DNA of 63,697 nt, filler included, from Lenisia limosa (Eukaryota; Protista; Breviatea), in assembly GCA_001655205.1 (NCBI GenBank). It is 8 parts of 8 records of this genome, joined end to end, with 100 filler letters (N's around TTAATTAATTAA, not from the genome) between each part and the next. Parts side by side here need not be neighbours in the genome. Positions count along the whole stretch, not along the records: positions 1 to 20,849 come from LPNZ01002478.1; 7 more parts are not named here. One strand, given 5' to 3'. Positions 5,350 to 39,740 of the stretch are shown here, in pieces. Within the stretch, counting starts at the first letter, position 1, and each line of letters opens with the position of its first letter. The position numbers were made by a program, and so were the translations under genes. The notes below the pieces were generated by a model. The model saw nothing but the letters and a program-made list of their open reading frames with translations, did no database searches and was not told the origin of the DNA.

Positions 5350-7877
5350 ATCTTTTAGAGTTCTGTGTGACAACCCAGGGGGAATGCTCGCCGTATTCCC
5401 TTGCATTCAACACAAGTTCTGTGACATGCAAAAACGGACTCTTTGAACCCTCCCTTGAGTGTTACATAAGTGGGAAGTGGGTCACATTGATATCCCCTCT
5501 TATCCTTTTTTCTATGTTTTGTTGTTTTCACCCTCATACATGTTTTTTTATTTTTCGAATATTTTGGTTGTTGTTTTTCTGTGGCAACTCTTTTCTTTCA
5601 TAATATCCAATAGCGTGATGGTGTGGANNNNNNNNNNNNNNNNNNNNNNNNNNNNNNNNNNNNNNNNNNNNNNNNTTTTCACCGTATCAGAATGTCTCCC
5701 TTCCGACTGCACGGACTCTTCGGAGTATCTCGCGATTCCGTGTGTTAAAAGGGCATCATTCGCCACCTGCAAACCATGTGCAGACCTATCCCGACACCCA
5801 GCTGATGGAAACAAATGCGGCGTTTGCCTTGACGGGTTCACGATTGCCTCGGAAAAAGTGGACACTATTGAACCGTGCACTGGTAGGGTGACATCTGTTG
5901 ATGTGTTATAGCTATAGATCTCTCCACCTGAGACCTAGTCTTACTATTGAGCCACTTATAATCTGTTCCCCTTTGAGGACGTTATCAATATTTACGATAA
6001 TATTATTTTATAAAGCCTTTGATGCAATTCTAACTCTCTGCTGTGACATAAGACGGATTTAGGAGGGCCTACCTGGGTTATCATGCATATAGTATCATAT
6101 ACTATATACTATATCATATGTGAATAATTCTGCTTTACGTTGAGTTTGGCTTGCTTCTCTCCTAGTTAATCCATATAGGATGCTCTGATTGTGAACATGA
6201 TTTCTACCGAACGGAAAAGTGCAAAGACGGTGAAGACACAGTGTAAGCTTTCATCTTTTCTTGTATTTGCCTCAAACAGTATTTACTTGACTTGCATTGT
6301 GACGGAATAGGTGTGTTGCCTGTAGTACTATCCACAGGCTCGGGGCGGAGGGTAACGGATGTGGGGCCTGCACCAAGGGCTTCTACCATATAACAACCGG
6401 AAACATCAATAGTCTGGACAAGTGCACTGGTAGGGCATTTTGCTAAGCATTTTGGCTGGTACTGTTTTGATTCTAATATCATATGATATGGTAATAGGGT
6501 CCACCTGAAAATGCATAGTATGTTGAGAATTATTTTGTAAGGTCAAGTCATTTGACAATGATATTCGCTATTAAACACCCTCACGGCTCCAGGGTGTTCA
6601 TTACACCATCGTGTATCTCTCAACACGGACCGGACCTCATGTGGTCAATGTGGACTGAACTATTTCCACACTGCTACGTCCGGCATCGCCACCTGCAATG
6701 GTGGGTACCTGAAAGTTATCTGGATTGAATAAATCCTATGATGATTGAATCAATACTATGATGGTTGAATCAATACTATGATGTGTAAAAACTGGAAACA
6801 TATAAGTTTGTACTATGATGAAGAATAATAAGTTTATACTCTGATGTAATCACATGATAGGTCAAGACAGCCAATTGAACCGCTTCATCCCGAACGGAGT
6901 TCTTTGGTTTCTAACCACTTAGCATGTAGCAAGAAATGCGCCTCATCGACGCAGTACATCAGCACGTTCTGCACTCCAACAGCGAACATTGGGTATGCTG
7001 CGCTGATGAGGGGTTGAGTCCCAGGCTTTCTAAAGGTTGAACTAAGTTGTTGCTGGCTCCACAACAGCCCGACAAAATAACCGTATTTCGTGGGAAAACA
7101 TGGATATTTCACCAGTCTTTGCAATGACTATCCCCAAGGTGTTCCGCTTGTAGCAGTCGAGGCCGAACAAATGGTGATGCTGTCAAGTGCGGGCAGTGTC
7201 TCTCAGGCAAATACAACACCATCTCCGGGGATGCTGCTGGAACTGCTATGTGCTATGGTTGGTGGGTTGTTCTATTCTGGCGGCACCAGCCGAAAATCCC
7301 GGGGGGTTTTAGGAGTATTGACGCGATATAGGTTGTATGGCACATTACAACCGTTATGGCAATTCAAGCGATCGGAGCAAGTGCGGTACTTGTGTTACCA
7401 ATTCCTGGTCAAATGACGCAGTTGGAATTACCTCCTGTTCAAGTTTGTCTGGCACTGAAAGATTTCACTTTATCAGGAAATTTCAAATGACCCATATTGA
7501 CACTTTAGAATGTTACTGCCCTAAGAGTAACTACCCTTCGCCGTGTAACAAGGACTTTGTTAACGACATCGGCCATTGCCCTTCCTGCATCGCTCTCAAG
7601 AGGTACCCCGGTGATGGTAACTTTTGTGGAGAATGTTTATCTGGGTTTGCAGGCCCTCTAAATTATTTGAAATCCAACAAGGCCTGTAGTTGAGGTCAAT
7701 ATGGTAATAGTATTATTAGGTGCTTGGTATGTTTTATGCGTGGAGGTTATCATAAAATATACATTTTGTTTGGACAGTGTCGAGAAGGGGGTGTCTTCAT
7801 TTTGTTTGGACAATCAGACTAGAAGTACCTTCTGGATTCAAAAAAAATACCATTACTACAGCGTTAAATCAGCTTGA
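5350..7877 (+). CDS. Cysteine-rich repeat (furin/TNFR-like) secreted or surface protein, multi-exon
   Basis: Repeated module CxxC..(R)xxDGNxCGxCxxGF..C: CKPCADLSRHPADGNKCGVCLDGF (~5767), CVACSTIHRLGAEGNGCGACTKGF (~6313), CPSCIALKRYPGDGNFCGECLSGF (~7577). GT-AG junctions separate the modules. 5' end lies near or in a gap. Confidence 0.7.
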
Positions 7878-10800
7878 CATCCTCCCTAGCCTCTTCCGCA
7901 ATAGCTCTCTTCATAGCCTCCTGTCGATGAAGCATTGTATTCACGTCGTTTCTACTGTGTGAGATTTGTCCAGCTGAAATCATAGAAGGTGGTAACACCA
8001 AACCATTGAAGAAAGACATTTGCAGAAACAAACCCGCCTACACGTTTGCGAAGCAGACAAAGCGATTGTGCCCCTCCTCAAGCTTCCTTGCTCTGCCTTG
8101 CATCTACAACGGTCAGCTAACCAAAACAAAAATACGAAATCTAGATTGAAAACCGACTGATATTACTAAAAACAACACGGATTTCCCCGCGATACCTGGA
8201 CAAACGAGTTACGCGTCACAGCTTCATTGAACTGAATCACGAGATTGGCCTTGGTGTCGATACCCTCGGATATGCACCCTTCCGTACCAACAAGCACAAC
8301 ATCGCCTTTCTCTTCCTGATTTGTCATTATGGGCATTTTGCAATTATATGTGGTTATGTCGCCAAGGATATTCAAATAGAATTGCCAAATCCTGGAAATG
8401 TTTATCACATACTTCGAATTTTAGGAGGACGTTGCTTGAGGAACTGCCAGTTTTGTGTATATTTATGCCAGACTGGAGCATATTTTGCACTAACCTCTTT
8501 AACTAAGGAGTTAAGGCTACCAAAGAGGATATTATATAGTATTGATATATTTCCTGCAAGCACAGAGTATTTACACAAGTGTACTTATGCGAATACGATT
8601 CATGCAATTTGTGCCATATGCATATCATATGATATTGTAAGATGTATATTATGTGTTGTATCAAATGCACGACACCCTGGTTATGCCTTTTCACATACCT
8701 CCTTATCCCCCACGAGTTCTTTTCGAGAACTCGACGACCCGACAGCCAGAAGCGTTTTGATCTTCATGTTGGTGACATGAGACCTGGGGTATTACAAGAT
8801 GTTATGTTAACTTCGGTCGCTTTATCAGGCTTACATGGACAGTATGGATTCGATGAAGGTGGCAGTGAGGCGGGTGATTGTAGAGATTAGAATACGTTTG
8901 GAGCCGTTTCCGGGAGGGCTGTAGTTACTCATTTCACCAATGAGTTCAGCAAACTGCAAATGCGTGAGGGAAAAAGAGCTATTGTGACGAAAATAACACG
9001 AAGGTTGATCTGTGTATGAAGTATCTTAGTATTTCGTGAAAAATGATAGTTTGAACGTTTAAAAATGATCTTAAGTGATATGATTCTACGTATGATTAGG
9101 AGAGGCCAATTAACAGTTAAGAGCCAAACATACCTTCTTATTGTCCTTCAACTCAATGCTCTTTTCATAGTTAGCAAATATGTGTCGTCGAAGACTTTCA
9201 GTGCGGACAAGAAGACGGAGAAGAGGCTTCGTTGGCTGTACAATAAGATTTGAGAATTCGATACTACTCTACATAAAAGATATCAATGCCCACCTGAGTT
9301 CTGTCAATGTTGTTGACATCAATGTTTTGCTTTGAAACTTTGCTGAAATCTTCGAGAAATTGGACCGCGCTGTCTCCTGAGTAAACGTCTTCTGCTTTAT
9401 CCTTGAATGTAAAATGGGAATGTGCTGCAGAGTATGCACTAAGATTTTTAATTGTGATAAATGAAGAGAGAATACAACATTGCTCGGAGTAGGCCTCCCT
9501 GCATACCGTAGCAAACAAGTGGGAGAGCGCAAACTCAGCCATTCCTTCGCCCTGATGAGTAATAGAGGAATATTTAAGAGAATGTTGCAATAATAATCAA
9601 TCACAGAATGTAAGTTTGTTCACGAATTTTGAAAATCACGCATCAAATAGTAACCCCACAAACATAATCACCCAAGACATGCCAGATGAAAAACAATAAG
9701 TTGACGTAAATGAGGGCAATTGAGTTCGACAGTTGGAGCTGATATGTAAGAAGAAAAAAAACGCAAATCGCAGGTGAAGAAGACATTACTAACTTGTCGA
9801 TCTCGTTCACGCTCGTCTTCGTAGCCGTACTTTCCCTAGAACTTAAAAACAAGCACTTTTGTCTTTGTTTACTACAAAAACAAGGTTGTATCTGGTCGAA
9901 GCCATTTACACCATCATGCTTATAAGAGATATTGAATTATAGAATAATATCATATTAATTTACCCAATCACTGTGCACAGCTTTCTACGTGCCATAATAC
10001 AAGAAACCACAACCTTGAAATCAGAGTAAACCCCCACCTTGAAATCAGAGTAAGACTCTTTGGATAGCACCTTCGCGGTATTGAGATTATAGGATTTCAC
10101 AGCATATCCAAACTGGAAAAATAATACAAGAATTTCAAGGGCTACTGAGAGTGCTTACATGTATTGTATATATACATGTACATCATAGCGTAACCCAACG
10201 TTAAACCACAATAATAAGCCTCACATATGACTCTTCATTTGGACACTCTAATATCTGAACCCCCCCCCCGGTAATATACCAATAGTAATCAAGTTTATTG
10301 AGAAATTCAGTCTTTTGGGACCGTTGGGATTCCTTTTACCCAACCTCTGCGTTCAAAGCATCAAGAAGTTTGCCTGAGGTTAAAGTATTTTCCTTCACTT
10401 CCATGATTGGAGGTCGAGTAATGTCGTCTAAATCTCGCAGACTCTGTAACAGTGATATCAAAATAATATTACATCTTTAATGTACAGATGAGAAATATAA
10501 AAAAAAGGAGAGTGGCCTAAACGTATGTAATGTAATAACAATAAAACGAAACAATTTGAAATCACACCTGCTCTTCCAGAGGATGGACCAGTATCCTGGC
10601 ACCAAGGTTCTTCTTCAGACCAGAAATGTCTATTGCGTCGGATGCTGGAAACAAGTGAGAAAAGATGTCACAATTGCTGCCTAGGTTGTAAACAGAGCAA
10701 GATCTTGCATATATCAATTGCTAAAGAAGATGTCCAGCTTTCTGAATGGAAAATATGTTTGCATATGATATTATTGATATGATATACTACTATGTACTAT

Positions 10801-13720
10801 ACAACGATGTACTACTTTAATTGGGAATTTCAATGTTGGGGGAATGGATAAAGCCTTATGCCTACTGCTTGGAGTGGCAGTCATGCCAAGTAGACAGTGG
10901 GATTCTGAGTGCTCTCTAATCTTTTTGTTAACCTAAGAAATTAGTAACTCCAGACATCAAGTCATGACAGACCTCCATGTAGGAATGCGATTTTGTTGCA
11001 TGATGCGCTTCATCAAATATGACAACCTTCAGCTTTGAACAGTCCATCGCTCCCCTACATTAAAATCCCAGTGAAAGATGGGCCATTTCACAGATTACAA
11101 CCACATTCGCTGAGACCCTCTCAAACCTTTCGATTTGGTTGAGGGCTGCTTGAGCTGTCACAACAATTACACGGCATTTTCCAATCTAAACTTCCCATAA
11201 AGCTTGGTGCAAACACAGAATGACTCTTTGACACAAAACATGAAAATATGTCATATATACTATGATATGGCATGATAAAATATGTCATGTATACTATGAT
11301 ATGGCATGATAAAATGGAAGTACTACATAAAATAAAAATATAAAGAGACGTGTGTTAATTCCGAAAACATTAGAAGTCCCACCATTGGAACAATTGCCTG
11401 TCGAGATGATGAGCCATTGAGCATTCCCACGTTGACAGAATTTGGCAAAAAAGACGCCAAGACATTAGCCTGAGATTTGATTACTTTTGGAGATGCAAAC
11501 AGAGTAAATTACAAATGAGAAGTACGGTATGCATGGTCTCTGCAAACTTGTTGTTCGACAAGGATTTTGGTATGAACAATGAAGAGTGCATCAATCGCTT
11601 TACTGCCTTCAGCTAATTTCGACTGACTTACAAGCTCACGGACAATCTACACACAGGTCATGTTGAAACTCAACACCCTGCAGCAAGGCGGATTTGAGGC
11701 ATTGGCATGATTGTTATTCCATATCAAAGTAGATCTTAAATAGGCGCCCAGAAGTAGCATATAACACACAAACCTCAGCGGCAACAACGGTTTTACCGGC
11801 ACCGGGAGGTAAGACAAGAAGTACTCCGTTGTTCTGGGAAAATAATAATCAGAATTAAGGATATGACCTGGAATAATCAGAACTAAGGATTTGCCCTGGA
11901 AAAAGCACTCTTACAGTACTGCTAAAAGGCGCTTTTGATAGTATGTTCCCAGTTCATACCTTTGTGTTTTGTTCCCAGAATTTATAGGTCTTGTTCAAGA
12001 TCTCCATTTGATAGCTTCTCAAAGTGAAGTCTGAGTGCTGTGAGTAATATGTTCAACTTCATTGAGACACCAAATTACATCATATGTTTAGAGAAGTTAT
12101 CCTGAAATTATTCTTTTCAATATATCTACAACTAAAGCAAACCTTATCCAAATATCAAAAGATAACACATAACCCAACCGTCTGCTTGACCTTTTCCTGC
12201 GATTATCAGAGAAGAGGGATCGGCATAATCCTCTTTCTGCAGGGTGAATACACAATGTAAGTTCTTCAAAATATCTATGCATGTTTGCTTTCAATGTACA
12301 TGGGGTCTGGAACTACAAAACACAATGACAACTGCATCAATTATGTAGCTATGAAAATGAACAAAGCTGCATTCTCACTACACTCTCGTTGGCTATTCGA
12401 CATTCCAACTTACAGCGAAATGCTCCGCGAAGAGATGTTGAAATTTATCTGGTATCTAAAAGTGATCAGTTGGTAAGTTTTCAATTTAACGAATCCATAT
12501 ATAAGCTATTTCAGTGTCCAGTCCCCAAACGATTTTAATAATGAGTGACCCAATACCTTGATCTGAGAGAGCGTCAGGCCTAACAGGCAGAAGTCTCTCG
12601 GTTTGCTGTTGATTTCTTTCATACACTTCTTCAGTCCCTCCCACCCTGTCACAATTATGCTAATTATGAAAAATGTGCAATGAGTCAGGGATGGAGAATT
12701 TATATTAGGATAAACGTAGCCTTGGTTTATAAAAACTCTCAAACACCATTTTTTGTTTAGGGTCGCACACACCGACAACAGACAACAACAAGAAATCGCA
12801 ACCCAGCCCACGGCCCTTTTTGAGAACGGCAATTTCTTTCGGATTGAGGGTTGGCAGAACAGTGTGGCAGGCTGCGTGGAAGCCAAGGTTCGCCAAAACC
12901 GTGGTTCTGTCCTGTTCCAGGCAGGTTTTACAGTTGAGGCATATGGACGAGTATCTATAGCATGAAGACAAGCAAAATCAAAACCAATCTCAACGCTTGA
13001 CCGCAACATTGGGCCTACTTGATTTTGAAGTCTCTATTCTTGCCATCTTGGAAACTATCCTCCTTCACATATTGCGTCGTGACCTGGAAAATAAGGTACC
13101 TCACAAATTTTACGTTATTTACGTAAATTTGCGTCAAAAAATATAAACTGTTAAGTACCTTCTCAAGAGGAGGTGATTAAAAATTCTAAAATTTACGTAA
13201 AATTTTCTGCAATAATCCGAATGCACACTGTAAAATTATTACGAAAATTTACGTAAACCCGAACGGTCCCTAAGCCAGAGTTATCTATCTCCACTTTCCT
13301 CACGTTCATCAAGGCAGCGCATTTGGCCAGGTCTGTTAACGCATAAGAGGCCCCGTTTTTGAAGTTTGTCAGGTCTGCTAGCGAAATAGGCAGGATGGTC
13401 TAAACAATGATTAGCAAATGGTTGAGAATTTTCCATGTATCCTCCTACTACTTGGCATTTGGAGCACTTCATATCTTGTGCGGCGGAAATTGATTGTGGC
13501 GGGAGACTAGAAGTGTGAGGATCAGAGCAAAAACTAGCCCCAACAACCTCCCAAACCCAACCGCTTGTTGAGCGGGAAGTTGATAAAAAGCTCCGTAGTG
13601 TCTAAATAGTAAAATCCACAAATGGAAATTGACAATTCTTCGGTTTATATTGGGAACCTTATTGCGTACCGTCGTTGATGGACTTGACAAATCCGATAAT
13701 CTTGTCGTCAGACATCTGTA
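7864..13720 (-). CDS. RIG-I/Dicer-family DExD/H helicase preceded by a RIG-I CTD-like Zn-binding domain
   Basis: Spliced exons give Q motif LRSYQME (~12010), motif I LPPGAGKTVVAA (~11790), Ia FIVHTKILVEQ (~11570), VLTAQAALN (~11150), II IFDEAHHATKSHSY (~11010), III LGMTATP (~10880), IV RILISTITRLTA (~8880), V VGTEGCISEGID and NLVIQFN (~8260), VI FVQ|MQGRAR (~8100), then a final helix and TAA at 7864. Upstream exons give CSKC...ICLNC...LGF...LPTLNPKEIAV...W. Confidence 0.85.
9882..9942 (-). repeat. Dispersed TIR-less repeat family U (cUUCGg hairpin); representative copy in a helicase intron
   Basis: Minus strand TATAATTCAATATCTCTTATAAGCATGATGGTGTAAATGGCTTCGACCAGATACAACCTT. Related copies at ~1, 5601, 19020, 23621, 54010, 54072, 54262, 56873, 57050, 58105 and 61148. 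Confidence 0.8.
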
Positions 13721-16330
13721 ATGTGAAAAACCAACGTCAATCACGAACAAAAAAAATGGAGGGAGTGGTTCCCAAATCTCACCACAGCATGTTGGTTCAC
13801 CGAAATAATCCTCCAATCCTTTGTGTCTTCAGCTTGCATTGCGTTGTCTTCATCATCGTCTTCCTACAAAAAATTAAGCTCATACATGATTGAAGTCTTG
13901 ACAACATTGGAACACACACCGATCTACAAATTATGCTCCATTGCACCTACTTCAATACAGCGAGCCACGAGAATGTCTGTGGGCTGTATGAGCCCCTCGT
14001 AACGGATGAGGCACTTTCCGCTGAATGTCGCCTAAGAAATGACTATTTTGAAGACATTGCTAGTGGAGTAAGGGGATCAACAAGACTGTCAATTATCTAA
14101 GTTGGCAGAAAAGGACGAGCTCCAATCCAAGTCAAACTCCTTTCAAAACCTTGACATACTCTGGTCGTTGACGAGGTGTCCTGAGAATCAAGACAACTGA
14201 CAAAGATTTCGATGTCCTTGAAGGATGCAGTGCAGTTTAATACAGATGTTTTGTCCATTTTCACAACAGGACAAAGTTCATAATCTACAGCATCAGCAGA
14301 AAAGCAAAATGTTGCATACCTTTTGGCCTGTCGCCTTGATAGACGAAAACATCTTGCATTGCTCCATCCGTGTCATCTATGTAGTAAACCCAGGAAGTTG
14401 AACTGTCAAGGTGTTTTCAATGAAGACGAAAGGTGACGCAAATGGGAATGGAAAACAACTTCTAAGAAGAATGGGGCAATTATTTTTCATAAAATATATT
14501 ATATAGCTATGTATCATATAGTACATGTATTACTCTGTAGTATCCCACTGTATATTATTGTATTGTGTAGGATATCATATCAAATCACAAGCTGGAAATG
14601 GATGGTAATTGGTTGAAAAGAACTTACGGATCTGGACCGTCTCCTTCATTGACTTAAGAAACTGTGGGTTAGGTCGATGAAGTAAATGTTGCGATGCTGA
14701 ATAGATGAGAGATACTATATCCAAAACAAAAAACGTAACACCATATTCCACAAAATATCCAACTTACCGAATTTGATTGAGTGAATTTGCAGACTTTCAA
14801 CTCGTATTGCGTCCACACTTTCGTTGTTTTCAAGGACGGCTGGATTAAATAATATAGTATATATATATGATGTGCTTCCCTCCGATCCCAATGTTGCATT
14901 TTCCTACGTTCAGGAGAAGACATGAGGAGATTGAGTGGAAGAGAGGATGCTTGGACATTTTCATGAGGCAAGGGGAGAGGAGACATCTGTGGCGGCATCT
15001 GTTCATCTTGGTACTGCAACACCTGGTTCAGATTGTCGGACCATTCGTTGTAAAATGCAGCAAGATTCCCAATGCTGGGAGTGAAGTTAAACAATGAATA
15101 TGTGAGGTTTAATTCCCTGTAACTTTTTCTAGGAATGTTTTATTGACAAAAATAATATTGGTCAAATATTTGTGAAAATTATTATAACAGAAAACAGGGA
15201 TTGACCACAGCCTACTAATCTGATCGCTCAGTTGAGCTGAACATTGTTGGGGCGACGAAAACAAGTTGATGGATTGGTTGGTTTGGTTTATCGTATGCCA
15301 CAGATCGTACACTACACTGTAAATACTGTATAGATATATTAGATCGTGTTTCAATATAATTTGGGAGCTTCCTTCAATATTGTCAACAAACGTGATCATT
15401 TATAACATGTGGAACTGACGTGAATTTGTCAATGTGTTCTCCATCCTTCTTCTTAATGTTCAGGTAATAAAGCCTTTCGCCCGGATCAGATTTGTTAAGT
15501 TTTTGCGCATTTGGAGAATACTCTGGGAACTGCTGATCAAAGAATCTAAAAAATGTGATTAACTGCATATAATACATACGTATTTCATTAATATGTGGAA
15601 ATGACTCCCTTTACTAACTTGTTTATTTTGCCCTTGACGATGTATGCCACACCTACATGTACATACAGGTTAGCATCACACAGAGGAGGATGTCAAAAGC
15701 TTCGATTACTAGTTATGCCCCTACCCACATCCAAAGTCGTCATTCGAGGTATATTGTCGGTACAGGTCTCTGAGTGTGTATTTACCAAACTCATTAAGTT
15801 GAAGTTCACCTTCATCCGGCCGGACAACTGAGGCCGTTTCCCAGTTTTCGTGGATAGTCAGGAACTGTTTTATTATCTAAAGATGTTATCATACTACAAG
15901 ATTATAAACAAAATTGGTTGAAATTACAAAATAAATACGTCTGAAGACCAAAGGAATACAACAGCTGTTTGGGAATGAAAGTAGCGGAAGGCTGAATCCT
16001 CAAATTATAACTTTGTAGATAGAATAGCTCAATGAAACAGAACTACTCAAGTGGGGTATTAGTGTATCTTACCTGACGAATAACCACATACTCATCTTGT
16101 ATTTCTACATGTCTAAACCTTGACTTCTTAACCACATACTCATCTTGTATCTTTACATGCCTAAACCTTGACTTCTTAGCCAGCTTGTATTTTTACATGT
16201 CTAAACCTTGACTTATTAACCCACTTTTTGAACCGTTTTTGAAAGGGGCAAATTCTTTGATTCGGTCTTTCGAGGTTTCTTGGACCCTTTAGCCTCCGAA
16301 GGAAGTTCGCACCCTTCATCTTCATTGATC
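13721..16330 (-). CDS. Unknown multi-exon coding region, possibly the N-terminal part of the helicase gene
   Basis: Phase-compatible exons such as IIKQFLTIHENW, RFFDQQFPEYSPNAQKLNKSDPGERLYYLNIKK, IGNLAAFYNEWSDNLNQ, WVYYIDDTDGAMQDVF and DYELCPVVKMD. One junction near 14410-14610 could not be closed in frame by hand. Confidence 0.5.
16070..16220. repeat. 40-48-bp tandem repeat anchored on a minus-strand donor site
   Basis: CTAAACCTTGACTT(C/A)TTA at ~16113, 16161 and 16201; minus strand reads CAAG|GTTTAG each time. Confidence 0.85.
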
Positions 16331-16702: not shown

Positions 16703-19700
16703 TGACTCAAAGGAAGAAAGGAAGAAAACTCGACTCTCCCATCTGATCCCCCTGAGGCTCCTCGGGCCGGCCAGCGACCATCGGGAAAGCGAAAGAAAAC
16801 GCAGGCGGCTAACTCATCGTCTATTAGATTAGTATGAATGCATCCCCAGGTATTATATGACCCCTACTATTAAAAACAGCTGAGCAGCAACAAACAACAA
16901 CAACAAGCGAGTGGAGAAGGAAAAAAAAAAAGTCAGAAGAACGAGATGGTTCCTGAGAAATTGGTGGTGAGCTTGAGCTTTTCATATCATCATATCATAT
17001 CTTTACTTGGATTATGCTTCATGATTTGTTTGTAACATTTCATATATATTTTATTTTATGACATAAATAGTGCAAACATATAATATACGTTAGAATGCTA
17101 TTTATTATAATGTAAGGGTCAAAAGAAATGTTACCTTTTAATTGAGATACCAGGATACCAAAAGGATGGAACGCTTCATTGCTGATGCGCACTGTCATCT
17201 CCACCTCAACCGAACATGGAAGCAGGTATGCACTAGACACTGTGAGATTCCAGGGCCTTGTTAATATTATTTTGAAATGGGTGCATCATTCAAGTTTATT
17301 TATATATATGCAGTCGTTGGCTACCTTAGAAAAGTGCTCTGGCAAGGTATGCAAACGTGTTTTTGGGTGGATCTTGTTGTATATTTTAACTATGGCGCAA
17401 CACCTATTCTTGAATGTATAGTCAAGCTTGTTGGAAAATGGTAGCAGTTGGCAAAAAGGGTTAGCATTTTCTACTTCTTTAAGCAGCAAAAACAAATTAC
17501 AGGAGAATAACGGAACTAACACCACAGGTTCAAGGAGTGTCATCATGTGGACTCTGTGTGAGAGATTGGCGCTGGATTTCAGCGATACAGCGATCCGATC
17601 AGCCTTTTGTTGTTGGTGGCGATGATGTTGTATATGCACAAATGATTGATATTAACTCATTTTCAAAATATTGTTGTGAATTAGCACACTCTATTGATGA
17701 TATTGAAACTGATGTTGAACCGTTAATAATATGTGCTGTTGTGAATGTCATTAACCGATGAGATTTGCTCCTCCAGGTCGACTCTCCCTAATGCTGTAGG
17801 AAACGCTTGCCTTTTTTGGAGCCCACCCTTGGTATATTTCGGAAGACGGGGAAGTCCCAGAAAAACATAGACACCCCGATGAGGTTTGCGATATTCAGAT
17901 ACGCATATTGATTCATTTGATGGTTTAATAGTTTAGTTTTGAATTTACTTAATATGATATGAGTTTTATTTCTGTGAAATGGATATAAATAATACCCAGG
18001 TCTGTGCATCATTTGAGGCCTTGGTTGATCAGTTATCTGACAGTGACAAGCAACTGATCCATCCCACATCGGGTGGGCTTGGTTCAGTACTCAACACATA
18101 ATACATTAATCTTGTTTAATGATGAACAGGCTTTGCCAGATTGACCTTCCTCACTTCACTTCTTGTTAAGAGCTGATTGTAAAGTGTGTAAATCATATAT
18201 TACAATTCAGTGCTATGAACTCATAATGCAGACCTTGGATTTGACGCAGAAGTCCTGGAGAAGTACCTAATTGCTCATCCCGCTGCCGGAATAGGTCTGA
18301 GTGTTTTGAGATGTTATGCAACATACTAGAAGCGGAGCTCGATCTTTGATCTTAAAATAATGAGACTTGGAGGATTGAAATGGATTGCAGTCATTTCTGT
18401 CTTACATTGTCCAGGAGAAATCGGGCTCTGTCGAATGTCATTGGCACCTAGGTGAGTCATTGGAGCTTTCTGATATTGTCTATCAGATGAATGGCTTTGA
18501 ACAGTGTACAGATGAAATAATAGGGTGACTTAGTATTGTTTCGTATTGTAATTTTGTGTATAGTTGAGTTATGTCAAATTCTTGTTTTACATATTGTTGC
18601 ACTTCACACTTTAAGTGAGATTCAAGAGGAGGTATTTGCCGCACAAGTTGCGCTTGCAAGGAAGCATCATCGAGTTATGTCAGGTGGGAGGATGATGCGG
18701 TGCAGGGGTGTGGCACCATCGAGTTATGTCAGGTGGGAGGATGATGCGGTGCAGGGGTGTGGCATCATCGAGTTATGTCAGGTGGGAGGATGATGCGGTG
18801 CAGGGGTGTGGCACCATCGAGTTATCCTCAGTCGATATATTAGACATAGCTACATTGTTGACTTTTCAGTGCACTGTGTCGGACGCTATGATAGGCTATT
18901 GGCAATTATCTCAAAAGACGGCCCTCTCACTGCACCCGCTGTTCTTCATTCATACTCGGCTGAGAAGAAAATGGTCTGATGATCTGATATGACAATGAGA
19001 AATATATAACAGGGGTTTATCTGGCCAAAGCCGTCCACACCGTCACGCTTTACAACTTTGTGTCTGATCCACAACTACATTGATTTGAAATATCAATATT
19101 ATGGTGATGATGTTGGTATCATATTTTTTTTTTGTTCACCTCTTTAGGCCCAAAAATTTGTTTCAATTGGATGTTACTTCTCATTTGGATCTGGAATCAT
19201 TGATAGGGTTAGCTGAACTGGGTTGCAACGTGTACATTATCTCAAAACACTATCTGTATCACTGTTACACTAAATACATGTATACATGTACATTTTGATG
19301 CCTCAGAGTAAAAGAGCTCTCAAAGCTCTATCGTCGGTTCCACTCTCTCGCGTTCTTGTTGAAACTGATTCCCCGTGTCTTCTTGCGCAGGGTTTGGAAC
19401 CAATGTAGGTGTTGGATATTGCTCCGATATACTTTTTCATGCTCTGAAAGTTTCAAATGTGACCCTTTTGAGTGATGATTGGTCGCTATTGTTGCCCTCA
19501 TTCCTTGTCACCAATCAGGCCGTGTGTTAATGGTGGAGGGTCACACCCGTTGCATGTTACCAACGCGCTTGAAGCAGTTGCTGAGCACATGGAACGTCCA
19601 CTTGAAGGTGGAGAAGTTGTGGTCATATAACCAATATTCAATCAACATCATAACGAGTCACCCCCCCCCCTTCGTCTTGACAGTGTAGATATTGAGTCCG

Positions 19701-29249: not shown

Positions 29250-32200
29250 TGTGATGTTTCCCTCATTAGTCATCTCAACTGCCTCGTTGGGATTTGGTGA
29301 AATTGCAGTTAATCCTTCTCAGCATGCCAAGTCTTCAAATCATTCAAGATACGCCATTGTTGTATTCAAGGGAATCAAGTAAGACATCTTTTTTCAACTT
29401 TTCTTATTTCATAATATGCTGCAAAAGAGTGTTATTTGACCACTGTCAAGGGAACAGTTTCTGCTTGAAGCAGTCAGAAATGAGAAAATCCCAGTTGGCA
29501 CTTTTGTGATCCATGATACCACCATGAAAGCCATCCAGAACCTTGATACCAGGGTCAGACCCGAAGTCGAGTCATACAATCAACCTGAGCTTGGTTGGTC
29601 AAAATCAGATGGTTTTAACTTTTCCCGGGTTTTTTATTTGTTTTCTTCCGGTGTTCTTCTCTTTTAACGTTTTAGGATCTTACACCACCGGATGTCATGC
29701 ACCTCCTCATCTTGTGCTCTCAAAAGAGGTATTTGTGAGGATACTCTACTGGTAGTAAAATATATATTTGAGCTAACACATACCTCCTCTTCACTGTTCT
29801 CATTTGGCTATATCATATTTGTAGCCCCCTTTTTTTTTTGACCAAAAACTGAAGGGTTACGATAAATAACAATTAAAATTTATTCAGATCATGAGAAGTA
29901 AAAGTAGAAAAGGATTTTGACATGCAACCTCTTGACTTATAAAATGTGTAGGTTGTTCAAGGAGCCTTCCACCCACTTTCAACTGGCCAGTTCATTTGTA
30001 TTCCCTCTGTATCAGGTTGGAGGTACTAAATCTTTTTATCTTTGATAGCGTGCGTCGCTCTTTTGTGTGTGTCTTTAAAAGTGGAATGCCTTCAACACAT
30101 ATCATGTGCCATTTTCCTCGAAATATTCTCTCCTCTGAATCTATGAATCTCCTAACAATATAGAATCCGAGCCCGAGCCAAGTGTTATGGTGAGAGGGAT
30201 TTTGACGTTTATAAAGACCGTTTAATCTGCGTTGTTAATAGTGTTTATCTTGGAATTATATTGAAAGGACAAGTTTGGGAGCATAAGAAAGACTCTTATC
30301 ATTGTTTAGGGCACGCTTAGATCACATATGATCGTTCCCACCACTCAATTTGTTTCAGATCTTCCCGCCTATATTCCTTCAAGGTAATTCAAATGACCAC
30401 ATTTAACTGCATATCTTCTGTGTAAAGGCTACGTGTTGTTTTCAGTGTATAGTCATAATATATAATTATATTAAATGTATCGATGCATCATTTTGAAGCG
30501 AAATTGAAACCGAGCGAAACTATGCCTTCTGACATTTCGCAGCCAAGACGAATTGTCTCCTCAGGATGTTGCCTTAGTTGACACTTATCATGATGATCTC
30601 AAGAGAGCTTTTCGTAGGCATTAGTTTTTTTTCCACGGTCACTCTCCAAACTCATTGCCATTCTCATTTTCCTTAACGCTCCAGTACCCCTGAAACAATC
30701 TGTGCAATCCAATGAAAGCGGAATTCGCTCCGTTGCCTTGTCTTCAATTCCTAAATCCGGAACATCAAATCTCCTGAGGTTTGTTGATGCAATATTGATT
30801 GGACCAATTATTTTTGGTATTCCTATGTATTCTTTTTTGTATCTTACTAAATATCATATTTTCTTGTCAATCTTCGTTTGACACACCAGGATAATGTCAG
30901 AGAGAGGGATACCGATTGAAACTGGACCCTTGCGTCGTCCACAGCCCCAGAAAACCCCTATTAATCTTGTCACCGCTGCAGGTATGTGCCTGATAGGACT
31001 TCAACCGTGTTCGAAAAGACTACTCCATAAAATTTCGAGGATTATCAAGGATTCAGTTTTGTTTTTGGAAACGAAGCAACTATTACATACTCTATCATAT
31101 GATATATTGTTGTCTATAATCTATAATTATATAGCATATCATATAATATATCATATACTGCATCGATATGTGTCAAGCCCTTAGAACTTGTGAAGGCGGC
31201 TTCGAGAGCTGATGATATGAACCTTGATGTTGGAACTGCTATTCAAAAGACACTCGGGATGACTTCTGTAGGGGGGCTTTGTCTAGGTGTATGGATTGTG
31301 GAAATAATATAGTAGTATGATGTTATAGTATATTATATTGCAAATCATATCGTATGCAAATATGAGAGAATGAAAAATAAAATCAGTTTTTTACCGATTT
31401 AGAAAACGATTACGGTTGTTGAAGATGTACGGTTTCTTTTGACAACTTTGCCTCTGTAAGCCAACTTTTTGATGAAAAGGGCTCTCTTCTCCCCTTCCCC
31501 GACATTATATTTCGTGGTATTGGTGATATTATATTATAATATTTTATATGTGGTCCTTGGTAATATTCCATGAGCTTTACTGCAAACAAGTAAATACTTG
31601 AATGCAATTCGATCCTATACAGCATACATAATATATGGTCCAGTGATCGCTTTAGGGAAGATGGTTTTTCAGAAGTAATCGTAAAGGCACTCAAAAAGGC
31701 AGTAGCAAGAGCCAATAATGGAGATGTTAGTGGGGGTTTCAAGATTTTGGAGCTGATGAAAGATTTTTTCTCAATCAGTAGTCTTCCAGTACTAGTTTGA
31801 GGTTACCTCACTACTTAGGGAGCGATTGTGCTGTGCTGCCAAAAAACAAAGAAGCAGGAGGTTTGATGCGGTTTATCAATCCTTATTTATACTGATAGAG
31901 TGAAGCCATTTTAACAAATTCAGCTCAAAATGATCTCTATGGGTGTCAACAAAGTAATATCTCTGCAAAATCTGTCTACAACCGCTCAGCACAAACTGCT
32001 TCAAGCTTGTTTGGGAGAAAGCCTGTCTTCTGAAATGAAGAAGGTCGTGAAGGAGGTGAGGGAATACTGCTTGTTTCTGCCCGGTGGGAAGTTGTAAAGC
32101 CGTGTGACTTGTTTATGATATCATCACTATCACTCTCATCACCATCATTACCATCATCATCATCAACACCATCATCATCATCCAACTGTGTCTTACAATA

Positions 32201-33630
32201 TTTGAGGCAACTCTTTTTTGACTCATTTAGCACATGAAGAAATTCCAATTTGGGGATATCCGTCTTGTTGCTTCTTCTATGAAAGGTAAACGCAAATACT
32301 GTTTACTCATGAAACAAAGTCCATGTTTAATTAGTCAGCTAACATAATAAAAACTGATCACGTACATATTTATGATATGATATCTTACAGCAGTTTCAAT
32401 GTAATTATAGCAGAAACGGCGACACATGGTGTATTTTTAGTAAAAAGCTGAAGCAAGGAGCAAAATAAAATCTAATATTTATTTATACCTTCAGTGCATT
32501 CTGCGGATGATCTTCTACATGCAGTAAAGAAAACAGCCGCAGAATCAGAGCGATTATCCCTCAAAAAGAAAACGTGAGAATCTTCCCTCTTTTCCTGTTT
32601 TTGTGTGTTTCATAAATTAATCATTCCATTCAACACCCCTGACCGTTACAGTAAGCTCGTGAAAGAGTTCATGACCCTCGAAGATTTTGTTGGGTTTGTG
32701 GGGGATTTGAGCTTCACTGCGGGTTGTGATAATACACTTATTGAAGTGTTATCAATATTTTTGGGATTGGAAAGAACCCATGAGGATTGTGACAACTAGG
32801 GCTTCACACTTCACTTCGGTTTGAAAAAGACCGGTAAATTATCGATAGTTTTCGAGGATTTATCGAGAAATTCAGTCTTTTTTTCAATCGAAATGAAGCC
32901 CTAGTGACAACCCAATGAAATGCTGTGGTGTGAGGGAGTTGCCGTCTCCAGGTCCTCAAAAGACAATTTTGATCATAGTCTTTCAAAAATCGGTATTTTT
33001 GTCTCTTTCAAAACAAAACTGCATTCACATTTATGTTTCCAGGTATCAGGAAGAGTGTCAAAAAATTGAAAAGGCATATCGAAGTACATCAGCAGATATT
33101 AAGGCCATGGTAGGTCAAACTCAGTTTTCTCTCCATTGATACCACTCCCATTATTTTAGCCCACCTTTACTCCCATTTTAGCCCACCTTTACTCCCATTT
33201 TAGCTCACCTTTACTCCCATTTTAGCCCACCTTTACTCCCATTTTAGCGAAACTTTACTGACACTATAGACCCGCCTTGGCATTTCTCCGTCATCCGGGA
33301 TCCTGGTGTTCGGTCCCGCAGGTTTGCTTGTTTCTTGGATCTTGAGAAGGTGGAACATAATGAAACGGTGTTATGGAAAGATGTGGTCATTGTTTTACAC
33401 TACTCTCCTGTGCTTTCCAGAGCGTGATATCTTTTCAAACACAAATGGCAGGTGGTGAACTGAAAATGAGAAATGATTTATTATGTGCGATATAACTATT
33501 GTCCTATCACACCAGTTGATTATCTTACTGTCAAGGCTCTGGCAAATCTCATGTTGTGGATGCAATTGTCAACAAAAACTCCCAAACTTCAGTATTCAGA
33601 GTTTCTGGTAGGTACATATTTCTTGGTGTT
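29250..33630 (+). CDS. Large multi-exon gene (or two genes) ending in an AAA+ ATPase domain; truncated by a gap
   Basis: TRLGISPSSGILVFGPA|GSGKSHVVDAIV (spliced Walker A, ~33271 and ~33536), typical of CDC48/PEX/NVL-type AAA domains. Many upstream GT-AG exons; subfamily not assigned. Confidence 0.6.
32797..32903. mobile_element. hAT-like MITE family B with perfect 8-bp TSD
   Basis: GTGACAAC|TAGGGCTTCAC...TGAAGCCCTA|GTGACAAC. Confidence 0.92.
33152..33248. repeat. 22-bp tandem repeat, ~4.5 copies, intronic
   Basis: TTTTAGCCCACCTTTACTCCCA repeated. Confidence 0.9.
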
Positions 33631-33954
33631 ATTATTGACATTTCCGTCGTTTTACTCCCCCCCCCCCTCATATCCTGTTTTGTTGACTCGTTCACTTTTT
33701 CATTTTTTATTTCTGGAAACAGTCCTGAGTGTTAGTTTTGATGCCGCTTATGTCACATCACTGGATTCTGTTCACCTTGCTGTATTTTTCACACTTATTA
33801 ACATATCATATGATACTGTGCGTTTTTAATTGCATTTCACTCTTATTGTTCANNNNNNNNNNNNNNNNNNNNNNNNNNNNNNNNNNNNNNNNNNNNTTAA
33901 TTAATTAANNNNNNNNNNNNNNNNNNNNNNNNNNNNNNNNNNNNNNNNNNNNTG

Positions 33955-34380
33955 TTTCAATGGGCTTTGAGATGCGGTCAAGAATTGAAGACAATTTTGA
34001 CTTGAACGCCCCCCGAAGGTGACAAGATCGAGTGGTTGGGTGCCGTGAGAAGTGTGGGAAGGGAGAAGGAAGAGGATTATGTTCTCCTCAGCCAAGATAT
34101 CGAGAGCAGCAGGGGTGAGCCGAGAGGTGTGGCCGTTGGTGAGCAGAAGAGCAGGAGCATCAACAGGAAGAGAACCATTTTGGCGAGTACTTCTGAACAA
34201 AAAAAGAAAAGAAAAAAGAAAATAGCTCATACTTGGATTCGAACCCTTGTGGGGAGATTTGACGCTGTTGCTGGCCATGTTGCTGTTGTTATTGACGCTA
34301 AAGAGAGTTATATAAGGCCATATGTTACGGAATAACCTACTTCTGCTTTGTAGGTCACTCCTTGAAGGTCCGTTCTAATG
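33955..34380 (-). mobile_element. pogo/Tigger (DDE_1) transposase fragment, probably inactive
   Basis: ALLLTNGHTSR..EENIILFLLPSHTSHGTQPLDLVTFG matches the DDE_1 LDGHxSH..LPxHTSH..QPLD motif, with N in place of the second Asp. Apparent intron GTATGA..TTCAG at ~34190-34232. Confidence 0.85.
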
Positions 34381-37300: not shown

Positions 37301-39664
37301 GACAGGGATGAGAGCAGCTAGAAGAGTTCTCAGTGAAGCCACGTACGTTTTAGGCTCGGATTGGTTTGTCAACCAAGAAGGATATTATCACTTGTTCTTC
37401 GATAACACTTTGAAATTTGTAGTTTAAAGCTCTTCTCTACTTGTTTCCTTCATCTCTTTTGCATAACAATAGGATGTTTACAAGAGATTAATGTCACTAC
37501 ATTCAATCATATGGTTGAAAAGCGGTGAAAATCTTGACTTAAATTCGAGCCTAAAAAAATCAAAATATTCGGCACCTCGACCCCCCACCGCCTTGCGTGT
37601 CACTGTCGTTACTGGCGAGGAATTTTCGCCCTGCGGCATTACCATTGATCACGCCTGGGCTGAGCTTCGCGCCCTTCAGGCTGGCGTCCCCAACACCTTC
37701 ACCGTGCTGTGTTACTTCCAATACGGCGTGGCTTATTCTATTTCTGAAAGCTTTGTTTAAGGTGGTTTAGTCCTTTTTTTGATTTTGGAAAAAAATAATA
37801 AAAGACCCTTTGGGATAATTCCGCAGTGTAATTTTTTGTATGAAATAGCGTCCGAGGTTGTTCCAATTTAAGACGTTTTTGTGCTTCGCTTTTTTTTTTT
37901 ATCTTTTTGGGAAATAAACACGATATTTGTAGAATTTGAATAATTTAAGTGGCAACGCAAAAGCAACACTTAGTCATCTTCGATATATTGTTGTATTAGC
38001 CTTAGTTAGGCACATTCCAGGCAATTTTCACCCATCTTTAGAGATCACCTGAAACGGTCATGCGGGACGGTAGATGGGCCTCTCTCCGGCAAGCCAACAT
38101 TTGCATTCTCTTCATTTGATACAGTGTTTCTCCTCCAAGGACAAACCTTAATTAATTTGGGTTATTTTGGGAGCTTTGGTCCGGATCACAGAGAGATCTG
38201 ACTAGATAAGCCAGCAAAGCTGTCCTTTTCACACTCAATTACGTGTCACCTTACCACCTTATCACATAGAAGGAAGTTAGAATATTTGTGTGCAATAACA
38301 GTATGTGACGAGCTAACACATGTTACATACCTTCCTTGGCTACCCTAGGAGGCAGACAAGGAGGAGTATCAATGTACATGCAAAATTCCTGACACTTAAT
38401 ACTTCATGCAAAATACATTTAAAAACACGGATTATGGGCCTAAAATCGTCCCTGTGTTAAAGCGAAGACGTTCTGGCACCAACAGCTTTGAATTTTACCT
38501 CTCTTGAGCAACCTAGAGGCATATAAGTAGAGAAAACGAGACAAATTGGCAAAAAATGAGGGTAAATTACACAAAAGGGGCGAAAATGTGATAGAAGATG
38601 TGAATCGAGCTCCCCTTTTGTGCCATTCCAGAACGGTAAATGTGTTACTGACGCACCATATACTTTAATCAGACGTCTACTTCGTCCATTGTCTCCATTA
38701 TAAAGACTGAACAAGGAAAATTCTTCAAAAAAACCTTAACACAAGTTGACATAAATATCTTTAAATAACTACATTATATCCAAAAAATGGACAGATTCGA
38801 ATTCTCCTTGAAAATCTGCGTTTGGTTGCGGGCGGAGGGATTATCGATCATAGCGCGGCGCGTAGACATAGCAATTTAAGAATTCTACAAGGAGCTGGCG
38901 CAGAAGGATAATGTTCATGTCTATAAGCCTAGAGATGAAAAGCCTAAAATGTATAATTGCAACCAGATTGGGATGGTGATTAAAGCGAGCACCACTACCA
39001 CCCCACAAAAGTTGACAAGGTTCTCCAAGACGTTTGGCGTATGCTAATTCGAGGCACCCCCTGGCACTCACAGGCACTGATCGCCGCTCAAGAGCTAGTG
39101 TACTCGGAGTGGGCAATGCAGATCCGTCGTACCAAAATTCTGGAAGCCTTGTGGAAGGTTAGAACTGGTTATTTTTTAAAACATTTGTGTAATATCATCA
39201 CTTTCCGACCAATTCTATTCTATATGATGATACTCTGTTCTAGTGCTATAAAGACCATCCTCCCCCATCCCCAGCCAGACCATGTATTCGTTTTTATTAG
39301 GAAATTTTCATCCTGCAGTCTCAGAAGTTTGTATAATTTTCAAGGTTGGGAACTACAAATTGGAGTTTGAGGTCCAGGCAATCAAGAGTCTCCCCGAATA
39401 CCCAAAATAACGGCTGCATCGTGTCTCTGAACACTTGATGGTCAAAGATGAGGGAGGGGGGGGGGCTACCTTGGTGCCAAGGTCCTTGACACCATGGTGA
39501 GACTGTATTGTAGGTACCCTACTTCCCTGACGGTAGCTTGAAGCCTAAGAACGGCTTGAACTTCTTATTCATTTCTAATAATACCCTCTAAATCTATAAC
39601 AAATAAATGCCAAATTGGTCATATATTCTCCTAAATTCATAAACTCTTGGAAGGTGAAGAGATA

Positions 39665-39740
39665 CAGTTACCAGTAAGTCTTGACCGATTTGCTCTATGA
39701 TTTTCCCAGGAAAAACGGTCAAGACTTATCCCGGTCACTG
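39665..39740. mobile_element. MITE family A
   Basis: TA|CAGTTACCAGTAAGTCTTGACCGATTT...AAAACGGTCAAGACTTATCCCGGTCACTG|TA. Confidence 0.88.

What the first reader, a model, noticed from the sequence alone, without database searches (positions are those of the whole stretch)
7864..13720. Permuted RIG-I-like receptor: CTD-like Zn/RNA-binding domain placed before the helicase
Seen: hand-spliced, phase-compatible exons at ~13505-12560 give QDMKCSKCQ|TILPISLADLTNFKNGASYALTDLAKCAALMN|VTTQYVKEDSFQDGKNRDFKI|KYSSICLNCKTCLEQDRTTVLANLGFHAACHTVLPTLNPKEIAVLKK..|WEGLKK. A stop-free path (IPDKFQHLFAEHFA|KEDYADPSSLIIAGKGQADGW|HSDFTLRSYQME) leads into a full RIG-I/Dicer-type helicase, which stops ~35 residues after motif VI. 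Established: the RIG-I/MDA5/DRH C-terminal domain has two CxxC pairs, then a conserved Gly, an LPxL/IPVI strand and a terminal Trp, and it sits after the helicase and pincer. Dicers carry DUF283/PAZ/RNase III there instead. Inference: this protist protein has the RNA-end-sensing module moved to the N-terminal side. I know of no described family with this order; it is a candidate antiviral or RNAi-accessory dsRNA sensor outside animals.
Basis: partly seen in the sequence, partly recalled or inferred. Interest (0 to 1): 0.87.

Follow-up and report, generated by a model that had tools for sequence, protein, structure and literature searches.

The report
Zinc module fused before Dicer/RIG-I-type helicase
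An expressed, 28-exon gene of an unidentified intron-rich eukaryote encodes a 741-residue helicase of the Dicer/RIG-I kind. It carries a cysteine-rich zinc module in front and nothing behind, an unusual layout, and whether the module is related to the RIG-I RNA-end sensor could not be tested here.

Summary

- One 556-nt contig joins the Cys-rich exons (from 13373) through the linker exons into the Walker-A exon (to 11816).
- A second 1637-nt contig runs from motif Ia to a stop codon 41 residues after motif VI begins, then into 3' UTR.
- The model has 28 exons (13472-7864) and gives 741 aa. It reads: zinc module (CxxC at 3-6, CxxCxxC at 66-72), a roughly 55-aa linker, a DEAH helicase with a 233-aa insertion, and one short C-terminal helix.

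The helicase type has thin support. Pfam ResIII matches three collinear exons. All 8 PDB matches of the motif-II exon are Dicer or RIG-I helicases, the best at E 0.011.

The key claim, that the zinc module is a displaced RLR C-terminal domain, is untested. The spliced protein has no reference, so profile and fold tools could not take it. The pieces hit nothing in Pfam or PDB. The largest zinc exon also has no relative among 1.84 billion proteins, in the Atlas or in the contig scans. Yippee/Mis18-type or unrelated zinc folds remain open.

The parts
13452..13472 (-). Exon 1: start codon and first CxxC (MKCSKCQ), residues 1-7
   Evidence: Predicted only, no RNA cover. The frame upstream is open back to 13601 with no other ATG. 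The donor is GTAGTA, PWM score 5.4 against 3.4-10.4 for known donors, and the intron to E2 is 52 nt.
13304..13399 (-). Exon 2, residues 8-39 of the zinc module
   Evidence: RNA contig 2 covers 13373-13304 (72 nt in bin 13200-13399, which includes 2 ambiguous nt). An in-frame TAG directly upstream of 13399 forces an upstream coding exon.
13019..13083 (-). Exon 3, residues 40-60
   Evidence: RNA contig 2 puts 63 nt in bin 13000-13199. GT-AG borders.
12812..12954 (-). Exon 4, residues 61-108: second zinc knuckle (CLNCKTC, Cys 66/69/72), then LG, LPTL and KK
   Evidence: Listed piece of RNA contig 2, 12811-12954. Translation checked.
12557..12645 (-). Exon 5, residues 109-138: Trp110 and the putative helix that closes the module
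   Evidence: Bin depths of RNA contig 2 (45 + 43 nt) and GT-AG borders.
12414..12455 (-). Exon 6, linker residues 139-152
   Evidence: 42 nt needed to complete bin 12400-12599. GTAAGT donor.
12186..12236 (-). Exon 7, linker residues 153-169, apparently with a GC donor
10866..12037 (-). Exons 8-14, first RecA domain (Hel1). E8 12037-11960 (RSYQ). E9 11833-11774 (GAGKT). E10 11646-11548 (motif Ia). E11 11469-11383. E12 11185-11127. E13 11054-10973 (DEAHH). E14 10932-10866 (TATP).
   Evidence: RNA contig 2 reaches 11816 and RNA contig 1 starts at 11617, so the E9/E10 junction is inferred (best PWM pair). The borders of E11-E14 come from bin depth plus a splice PWM. Pfam ResIII matches E9, E13 and E14 at profile positions 21-58, 125-147 and 144-163. 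PDB matches of E13 are all Dicer or RIG-I.
9134..10644 (-). Exons 15-22, residues about 347-554: the 233-residue stretch between motifs III and IV, a candidate Hel2i-like insertion
   Evidence: All joints are listed for RNA contig 1. No family match by pieces. The fold was not tested.
8042..8953 (-). Exons 23-27, second RecA domain (Hel2): motif IV region, motif V (SEGID, NLVIQF), motif VI (QMQGRARK)
   Evidence: Joints listed for RNA contig 1. The features of the motif-V exon look like Helicase_C clusters in the Atlas, score 0.88, which is a lead only.
7864..7951 (-). Exon 28: last 28 residues and the stop codon (7866-7864); the protein ends at residue 741
   Evidence: RNA contig 1 covers 7951-7800 without a break and runs on beyond 7800, giving at least 64 nt of 3' UTR within the stretch.

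Best explanation
A single expressed gene (minus strand, 13472-7864, 28 exons, introns 40-232 nt) encodes a 741-residue protein.

- Residues 1-about 118 form a Cys-rich zinc module. CxxC at 3-6 and CxxCxxC at 66-72 are the likely four ligands. By eye the pattern is mostly beta-strand-like and it ends in a helix.
- Residues about 119-170 are a linker.
- Residues about 171-741 are an SF2 helicase of the RIG-I-like family in the broad sense (Dicer, RLR, FANCM/Hef), and closest to the Dicer/RLR branch. It has a 233-residue insertion between motifs III and IV and only one short helix after motif VI.

Most likely the protein is an RNA-dependent (dsRNA) ATPase without an effector domain. The N-terminal zinc module would supply the extra nucleic-acid or RNA-end contact that RLRs place at the C-terminus. 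The protein would then act as an accessory or regulator in small-RNA or antiviral RNA surveillance, in the manner of LGP2, DRH-1/3 or Hrr1.

Shown: gene structure, expression, domain order, helicase motifs, Cys pattern. Inferred: zinc binding, the fold of the module, the RNA substrate, the role.
For: - Spliced RNA contigs link the zinc exons to the helicase exons and define the stop (reconstruction).
- The ORF is continuous over 2226 nt.
- Cys enrichment and paired CxxC motifs in the first 130 residues.
- Pfam ResIII on three collinear exons: 21.9, 18.7 and 12.2 bits.
- All 8 PDB matches of the motif-II exon are Dicer or RLR helicases: ancestral Dicer helicase 9mw6 at E 0.011, Dicer-2 at 1.3, RIG-I 3tbk at 1.5.
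- The motif-V exon resembles Helicase_C clusters in the Atlas.
- From the sequence compared with my own knowledge of the families: motif VI QMQGRARK and the F-N-x5-N-S-F-V-Q stretch before it resemble Dicer (QSKGRARA). NLVIQF resembles the CNLV(V/I) of Dicer and RLRs.
- Two CxxC knuckles about 50-60 residues apart are the hallmark of the beta-tent families, which include the RIG-I regulatory domain (PMC4287342).
Against: - No profile or fold test of the zinc module was possible.
- Its pieces hit nothing in Pfam or PDB (exon 4 only).
- Exon 4, or the open frame that holds it, found no relative in 1.84 billion representatives, the Atlas, the 90% clusters, or metagenome and viral contigs.
- Motif II is DEAH, not DECH.
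- The PDB matches are weak, and most other helicase exons gave no relevant match.
- Exon 1, which holds the first CxxC, has no RNA cover.
- The RNA does not cover 11816-11618.
- No orthologue is known, so conservation of the layout is untested.
Confidence: 0.4

Rival explanations
1. Same gene and same Dicer/RLR-type helicase. The N-terminal module is not an RLR-CTD equivalent. It is a Yippee/Mis18/CULT-type beta-tent used for protein or small-ligand binding and oligomerisation, or an unrelated zinc ribbon or treble-clef domain. The order 'zinc domain then helicase' would then be an ordinary fusion, not a permutation.
For: - The first 30 residues (C-x2-C-x-T-I-L ... L ... F-x-N-G) look as much like the start of Yippee proteins as like RLR CTDs. 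This rests on my reading and memory of those families.
- CULT, Yippee, Mis18, MsrB and the RIG-I RD all share the two-CxxC beta-tent and are hard to separate by sequence (PMC4287342).
- There is no hit to PF11648 in any piece.
- The second knuckle is followed by about 14 residues before the LG, longer than I recall for RLR CTDs.
Against: - There is no hit to the Yippee-Mis18 profile in any piece either.
- The only beta-tent family known to be fused to this helicase family is the RLR CTD (canonical architecture as in PMC6723221).
Confidence: 0.35
2. The helicase is a FANCM/Mph1/Hef-type DNA branch-point translocase. The zinc module would be a DNA-binding or recruitment domain, and the protein would work in DNA repair or recombination, not in RNA sensing.
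For: - Motif II is DEAH and motif III is TATP, as I recall for FANCM, Mph1 and Hef, whereas Dicer and RLRs have DECH and TAS.
- These helicases also carry an insertion between the RecA domains and belong to the same SF2 family.
Against: - The motif-II exon matched only Dicer and RIG-I chains in the PDB and no FANCM, Mph1 or Hef chain.
- Motif VI is QMQGRARK, not the QRxGRTGR type that I recall for that branch.
- Motif Ia lacks its APTxPLV signature.
- The long C-terminal regions of FANCM and Mph1 are absent.
Confidence: 0.12
3. Artefact: two neighbouring genes joined by a chimeric RNA contig or by read-through, or a decaying pseudogene.
For: - RNA cover is thin (contig depths 7 and 22).
- It is absent over exon 1 and over 11816-11618.
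- One intron needs a GC donor.
Against: - All 14 RNA joints that the tool listed lie at canonical GT-AG sites (checked). The other junctions were placed at GT-AG sites by the reconstruction, apart from the one GC donor.
- Contig 2 keeps one open frame through eight exons, from the zinc module into the Walker-A exon.
- The uncovered junction lies between motif I and motif Ia of one RecA domain, so it cannot separate two genes.
- The whole 2226-nt CDS has no stop or frameshift.
Confidence: 0.03

Closest known systems
RIG-I-like receptors, especially the CARD-less LGP2, and nematode DRH-1/DRH-3
   Same: - A helicase core with an insertion between the RecA domains.
- An accessory module of about 115 residues with two Cys pairs about 60 residues apart.
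- No nuclease.
- LGP2 likewise has no signalling domain.
   Different: - Here the module lies before the helicase, not after it.
- Only the start of a pincer-like helix follows motif VI.
- Motif II is DEAH, not DECH.
- No profile match to the RLR CTD was obtained from the pieces.
- RLRs have so far been reported only in animals (PMC6723221, PMC4287342), and the host here is unknown.
Dicer helicase domain (Dicer-2, plant DCLs, the reconstructed ancestral Dicer helicase 9mw6)
   Same: - Best PDB match of the motif-II exon.
- Motif VI and the stretch before it look Dicer-like (sequence compared with my knowledge of the family).
   Different: - No DUF283, PAZ, RNase III or dsRBD follows. The protein stops 41 residues after motif VI begins.
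- Dicers have no N-terminal zinc module.
Yippee/Mis18/CULT beta-tent zinc domains
   Same: - Two CxxC knuckles about 50-60 residues apart in a small, apparently beta-rich domain (PMC4287342).
- The N-terminal stretch is reminiscent of Yippee.
   Different: - As far as I know these occur as stand-alone proteins or in cereblon, not fused to helicases.
- No profile hit was obtained from the pieces.
FANCM/Mph1/Hef helicases
   Same: - Same SF2 family, with DEAH and TATP-like motifs and an insertion domain.
   Different: - Motifs Ia and VI differ.
- No nuclease or ERCC4-like tail.
- No PDB match from this branch.

Membership tests
SF2 helicase (ResIII/DEAD N-terminal domain plus Helicase_C) | Walker A (motif I), motif II DExH and motif III, collinear in one domain | tested here: met
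   Pfam ResIII matches exons 9, 13 and 14 at profile positions 21-58, 125-147 and 144-163 (E 1.8e-4, 1.7e-3, 0.18). GAGKT lies at residue 206, DEAHH at 311 and TATP at 342.
SF2 helicase (ResIII/DEAD N-terminal domain plus Helicase_C) | Second RecA domain with motifs IV-VI | tested here: inconclusive
   The motifs are visible (SEGID at 668, QGRAR at 694), and the Atlas features of exon 26 point to Helicase_C (a lead only). Pfam Helicase_C did not hit the single exons.
Dicer/RIG-I-like (DRA) helicase branch | DECH form of motif II | tested here: not met
   The sequence reads DEAHH at residues 311-315. That DECH is typical of the branch is my own knowledge.
Dicer/RIG-I-like (DRA) helicase branch | Closest sequence relatives are Dicer or RLR helicases | tested here: inconclusive
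   All 8 PDB matches of exon 13 are Dicer or RIG-I, best E 0.011. The other helicase exons tried gave no relevant match: exon 9 matched only AAA ATPases through its P-loop, exons 8 and 10 gave chance hits, and exons 14, 23, 26 and 27 gave nothing. A search with the full helicase was not possible.
Dicer/RIG-I-like (DRA) helicase branch | Helical Hel2i insertion between Hel1 and Hel2 | not testable with these tools
   233 residues lie between motifs III and IV, which is the right size.
RIG-I-like receptor (RLR) | RNA-binding C-terminal domain after the helicase and pincer | tested here: not met
   An RNA-supported stop lies at 7866-7864, and only 41 residues follow the start of motif VI.
RIG-I-like receptor (RLR) | Zinc-binding CTD fold (PF11648) anywhere in the protein | tested here: inconclusive
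   A four-Cys pattern is present (Cys 3, 6, 66, 69). No PF11648 hit came from exons 1-5 scanned singly, and each piece is too short to decide. The whole module was not testable.
Dicer | PAZ and tandem RNase III domains after the helicase | tested here: not met
   The ORF ends at residue 741. tblastn of the model against the flanks shows no further related exons.
Yippee/Mis18 (PF03226) | Two CxxC motifs about 50 residues apart in a beta-tent domain, with a profile match | tested here: inconclusive
   The CxxC spacing is 60 residues. No profile hit came from the single exons. The whole module was not testable.
FANCM/Mph1/Hef | Motif Ia APTxPLVxQ and motif VI QRxGRTGR (my own knowledge of the family) | tested here: not met
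   The sequence has HTKILVEQQ at 240 and QMQGRARK at 693. No chain of this branch is among the PDB matches.

The most novel reading that the evidence does not exclude
The module is a true homologue of the RLR C-terminal RNA-end-sensing domain, placed in front of a Dicer/RLR-type helicase in a non-animal eukaryote. It would be a naturally permuted RIG-I-like sensor. That would mean the pairing of this beta-tent domain with this helicase either predates animals or arose twice. It would also mean RNA-end capping can work when tethered to Hel1 instead of to the pincer.
Probability: 0.22. Interest if true: 0.8.

Novelty: new variant of a known kind. Interest (0 to 1): 0.55.

Why it matters
RLRs and Dicers share a helicase that reads dsRNA. 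What differs is the module that recognises RNA ends and where it is tethered. A natural protein with a zinc module tethered to the N-terminal side of this helicase, and with no effector domain, would test how far the ring-around-RNA geometry of RIG-I depends on domain order. If the host is not an animal, it would also bear on when RLR-like sensing arose; published surveys found RLRs only in animals (PMC6723221). Even under the modest reading, the gene is transcribed and the largest exon of its zinc module has no detectable relative among 1.84 billion representative proteins.

Tried and rejected
1. Spliced protein in the remote tools. So Pfam, PDB-profile, homologue, Atlas and AlphaFold/Foldseek runs on the whole module or the whole helicase were left out. 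A comma-joined reference was rejected by the translate tool. PDB chain ids are not accepted as sequences. The script machine holds no profile libraries.

2. Piecewise searches.
- Pfam on every exon or its open frame gave only ResIII/DEAD and generic P-loop families.
- PDB phmmer was run on exon 4 and eight helicase exons. Only exon 13 was informative. Exon 9 hit AAA ATPases through its P-loop, which is generic.
- One search used the wrong frame and should be ignored.

3. Exhaustive phmmer of exon 4 against 1.84 billion representatives. The only two hits were bacterial Cys-repeat proteins, P0001 and P0002, matched in 4-5 stretches each, and I rejected them as spurious.

4. 90%-cluster searches. 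These returned only P0003, a prokaryote-style ORF called on this same contig. The collection therefore holds no spliced product of the gene.

5. Metagenome and viral contig scans with the exon 4 and exon 26 open frames found no relatives.

6. Duplication-fusion origin. tblastn of the model against the locus found no leftover helicase or zinc exons in the flanks.

7. Rfam found nothing.

8. Identifying the organism. The contig is from ENA metagenome assembly ERZ3820729, no paper names that assembly, and the neighbouring open frames have no Pfam hit.

Full report
**What was checked first**

The region 13720-7864 was translated in the three minus-strand frames.

**Transcript evidence**

One poly(A) RNA run (X1) and one DNA run (X2) of the same study hold this stretch. 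Laying their contigs on 7800-13799 gave two RNA contigs.

Contig 1 is 1637 nt with depth 21.9. It is spliced on the minus strand. Fourteen of its joints were listed, and all lie at GT-AG sites once the tool's cut shifts are applied. Its exons are:
- 7951-7800 (running on beyond the stretch)
- 8103-8042, 8315-8196, 8502-8413, 8783-8699, 8953-8835
- 9235-9134, 9401-9294, 9551-9507, 9738-9664, 9835-9794
- 10112-10038, 10443-10345, 10644-10568
- an exon starting at 10866

I therefore recovered them from the mean depth per 200-nt bin, which converts exactly into covered bases.

For contig 1 the remaining 365 nt split as 94, 114, 17, 122 and 18 nt over bins 10800-11799. A search over GT-AG introns that keeps the frame open gives 10932-10866, 11054-10973, 11185-11127, 11469-11383 and 11646(11617)-11548 as the best-scoring five-exon solution. 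Five alternatives differ only by a few residues around exons 12-14.

Contig 2 is 556 nt with depth 7.35 and has one listed piece, 12811-12954. Its bins (58, 52, 37, 85, 45, 144, 63 and 72 nt from 11800 to 13399, and 0 beyond) match, base for base, the following:
- 18 nt of 11833-11774
- 12037-11960
- 12236-12186
- 12455-12414
- 12645-12557
- 12954-12812
- 13083-13019
- 13373-13304

The match allows 1-2 nt at ambiguous joints.

So one RNA contig carries, in one open frame, most of the Cys-rich module, the linker, the RSYQ exon and the beginning of the Walker-A exon. The only stretch without RNA is 11816-11618. It lies between motif I and motif Ia of the same RecA domain, and the best splice pair there is 11774/11646. 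The two-gene reading is therefore excluded for practical purposes.

**The gene model**

There are 28 exons, with a CDS of 2226 nt giving 741 residues and a stop at 7866-7864.

Exon 1 (13472-13452, MKCSKCQ) is predicted only. It is needed because exon 2's frame is closed by a TAG directly upstream of its acceptor. It is the nearest ATG exon in phase 0, its intron would be 52 nt, and its donor score lies within the range of the confirmed donors. The next candidates would need introns of 700 nt or more, far longer than any confirmed intron here (40-232 nt).

Intron 7 seems to use a GC donor.

**Anatomy of the protein**

| Residues | Feature |
|---|---|
| 1-about 118 | Cys-rich module: Cys at 3, 6, 34, 66, 69, 72, 90, 116 (and 128); His at 87, 91 |
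| about 119-170 | Linker |
| 176 | RSYQ |
| 206 | GAGKT |
| 240 | Motif Ia |
| 311 | DEAHH |
| 342 | TATP |
| 343-574 | 233-residue stretch between motifs III and IV |
| about 575 | Motif IV region |
| 668 | SEGID |
| 676 | NLVIQF |
| 693 | QMQGRARK |
| 701-741 | Last 41 residues, apparently helical |

- The first 130 residues hold 9 Cys against 5 in the other 611 (p = 1e-4).
- No CARD, PAZ, RNase III, dsRBD or C-terminal domain is present.
- tblastn of the model against the whole locus shows no other related exons or remnants.

**What kind of helicase**

Searched exon by exon, Pfam gives ResIII on exons 9, 13 and 14 at collinear profile positions.

PDB phmmer with the 27-residue motif-II exon returns eight sequences, all of them Dicer or RIG-I helicases. 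They are the reconstructed ancestral Dicer helicase 9mw6 (E 0.011), Drosophila Dicer-2 (E 1.3) and the RIG-I helicase domain 3tbk (E 1.5). The other exons tried gave nothing, a few chance hits, or generic P-loop hits.

From the sequence and my own knowledge of the families:
- Motif VI and the stretch before it are Dicer-like.
- Motif V's NLV is Dicer/RLR-like.
- DEAH and TATP are more like FANCM/Mph1/Hef.

I therefore place the protein in the RIG-I-like SF2 family in the broad sense, probably on the Dicer/RLR side. This rests on thin evidence.

**What kind of zinc module**

This is the heart of the finding, and it could not be settled. The module is split over five exons of 7, 32, 21, 47 and 29 codons.

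Searched apart, the pieces hit no Pfam family of interest. Exon 4, or the open frame that holds it, was taken further:
- no PDB chain
- no Atlas cluster above chance
- no relative in metagenome or viral contigs
- no relative in the 90% clusters
- in an exhaustive phmmer against 1.84 billion representatives, only two spurious bacterial Cys-repeat proteins

The protein collection holds only a prokaryote-style ORF of this contig (P0003). The blank therefore says that no annotated protein anywhere has a recognisably similar exon 4. It does not say that the fold is new.

By eye, the order of features does recall RLR CTDs: CxxC; then F-x-D ... I-C-x2-C; then LG; then LPTL-x4-I-x-V; then KK-x2-W. The opening C-x2-C-x-T-I-L ... 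F-x-N-G recalls Yippee about as well. The published analysis of the beta-tent fold stresses that CULT, Yippee, Mis18, MsrB and the RIG-I regulatory domain share this two-knuckle design. It also notes that they sit near the limit of sequence detection (PMC4287342).

I therefore regard 'beta-tent-like zinc module' as plausible and 'displaced RLR CTD' as one of several open readings, at about one in four or five.

**How it most likely works**

All of this is inference. The helicase core binds and hydrolyses ATP on duplex RNA. With no nuclease or signalling domain, the protein would act as an accessory or regulatory ATPase, as LGP2, DRH-1/3 and Hrr1 do in their pathways.

Rivals are:
- a protein-interaction or unrelated zinc domain on the same helicase
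- a FANCM/Mph1-like DNA translocase
- an artefact, which is very unlikely

**Host**

The contig is NODE_112 (48,478 nt) of ENA metagenome assembly ERZ3820729 and is identical to the window. Nothing in the window identifies the organism. RLRs are reported from sponges and cnidarians onward but not outside animals (PMC6723221). So 'outside animals' would matter, but it is unproven.

**Verdict**

- The architecture (zinc module, then a Dicer/RLR-like helicase, then nothing) is unusual, and I know of no described family with it.
- The specific claim of a permuted RIG-I-like receptor remains a hypothesis. It needs one simple computation on the spliced sequence that could not be run here.
- Novelty: a new variant of a known kind. 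Interest: 0.55.

Noticed in passing
window 9836-10037 (intron between exons 17 and 18), especially 9887-9952: A very high-copy short repeat. The DNA run's summed word depth is 4153 in bin 9800-9999 against about 40 elsewhere. Many short DNA contigs end at 9908-9952, and one DNA contig joins 9168 to 9877. A 24-nt tandem duplication lies at 10004-10051.
   Followed up: partly
window 12185-12184 (donor of intron 7): RNA depth accounting requires exon 7 to end at 12186. That gives a GC-AG intron, the only non-GT donor among the 27 introns.
   Followed up: partly
window 9402-9506 (intron between exons 20 and 21): The 105-nt intron is in frame and free of stops. If it were retained it would insert 35 residues into the helicase insertion domain without breaking the frame.
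   Followed up: no
window 5459-5911 and 7322-7690, + strand: Cys-rich open frames with repeated C-x2-C-x3-G-F-like patterns, lying convergent with the 3' end of the helicase gene. They are probably exons of a Cys-repeat, surface-type protein. They have no Pfam hit.
   Followed up: partly
window 18664-18825 and 1894-2013: Tandem repeats: a 49-nt unit in 3.3 copies at 97% identity, and a 42-nt unit in 2.9 copies at 91%. The window and the ENA contig differ in copy number around 18713-18776.
   Followed up: no
L001 (ENA ERZ3820729 NODE_112, 29950-48478): The public contig fills the window's three N gaps and is otherwise identical. Its gene calls are prokaryote-style or run through stops (for example 395 aa at L001 1231-2418, where there is no open frame in table 11). 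They say nothing about the real genes.
   Followed up: partly
window 14672-15139, - strand: A 156-codon open frame lies upstream on the same strand, Pro- and Gln-rich, with only a weak hit to DUF7763. It may be the last exon of the upstream neighbour, which would leave about 1.2 kb between the two genes.
   Followed up: no
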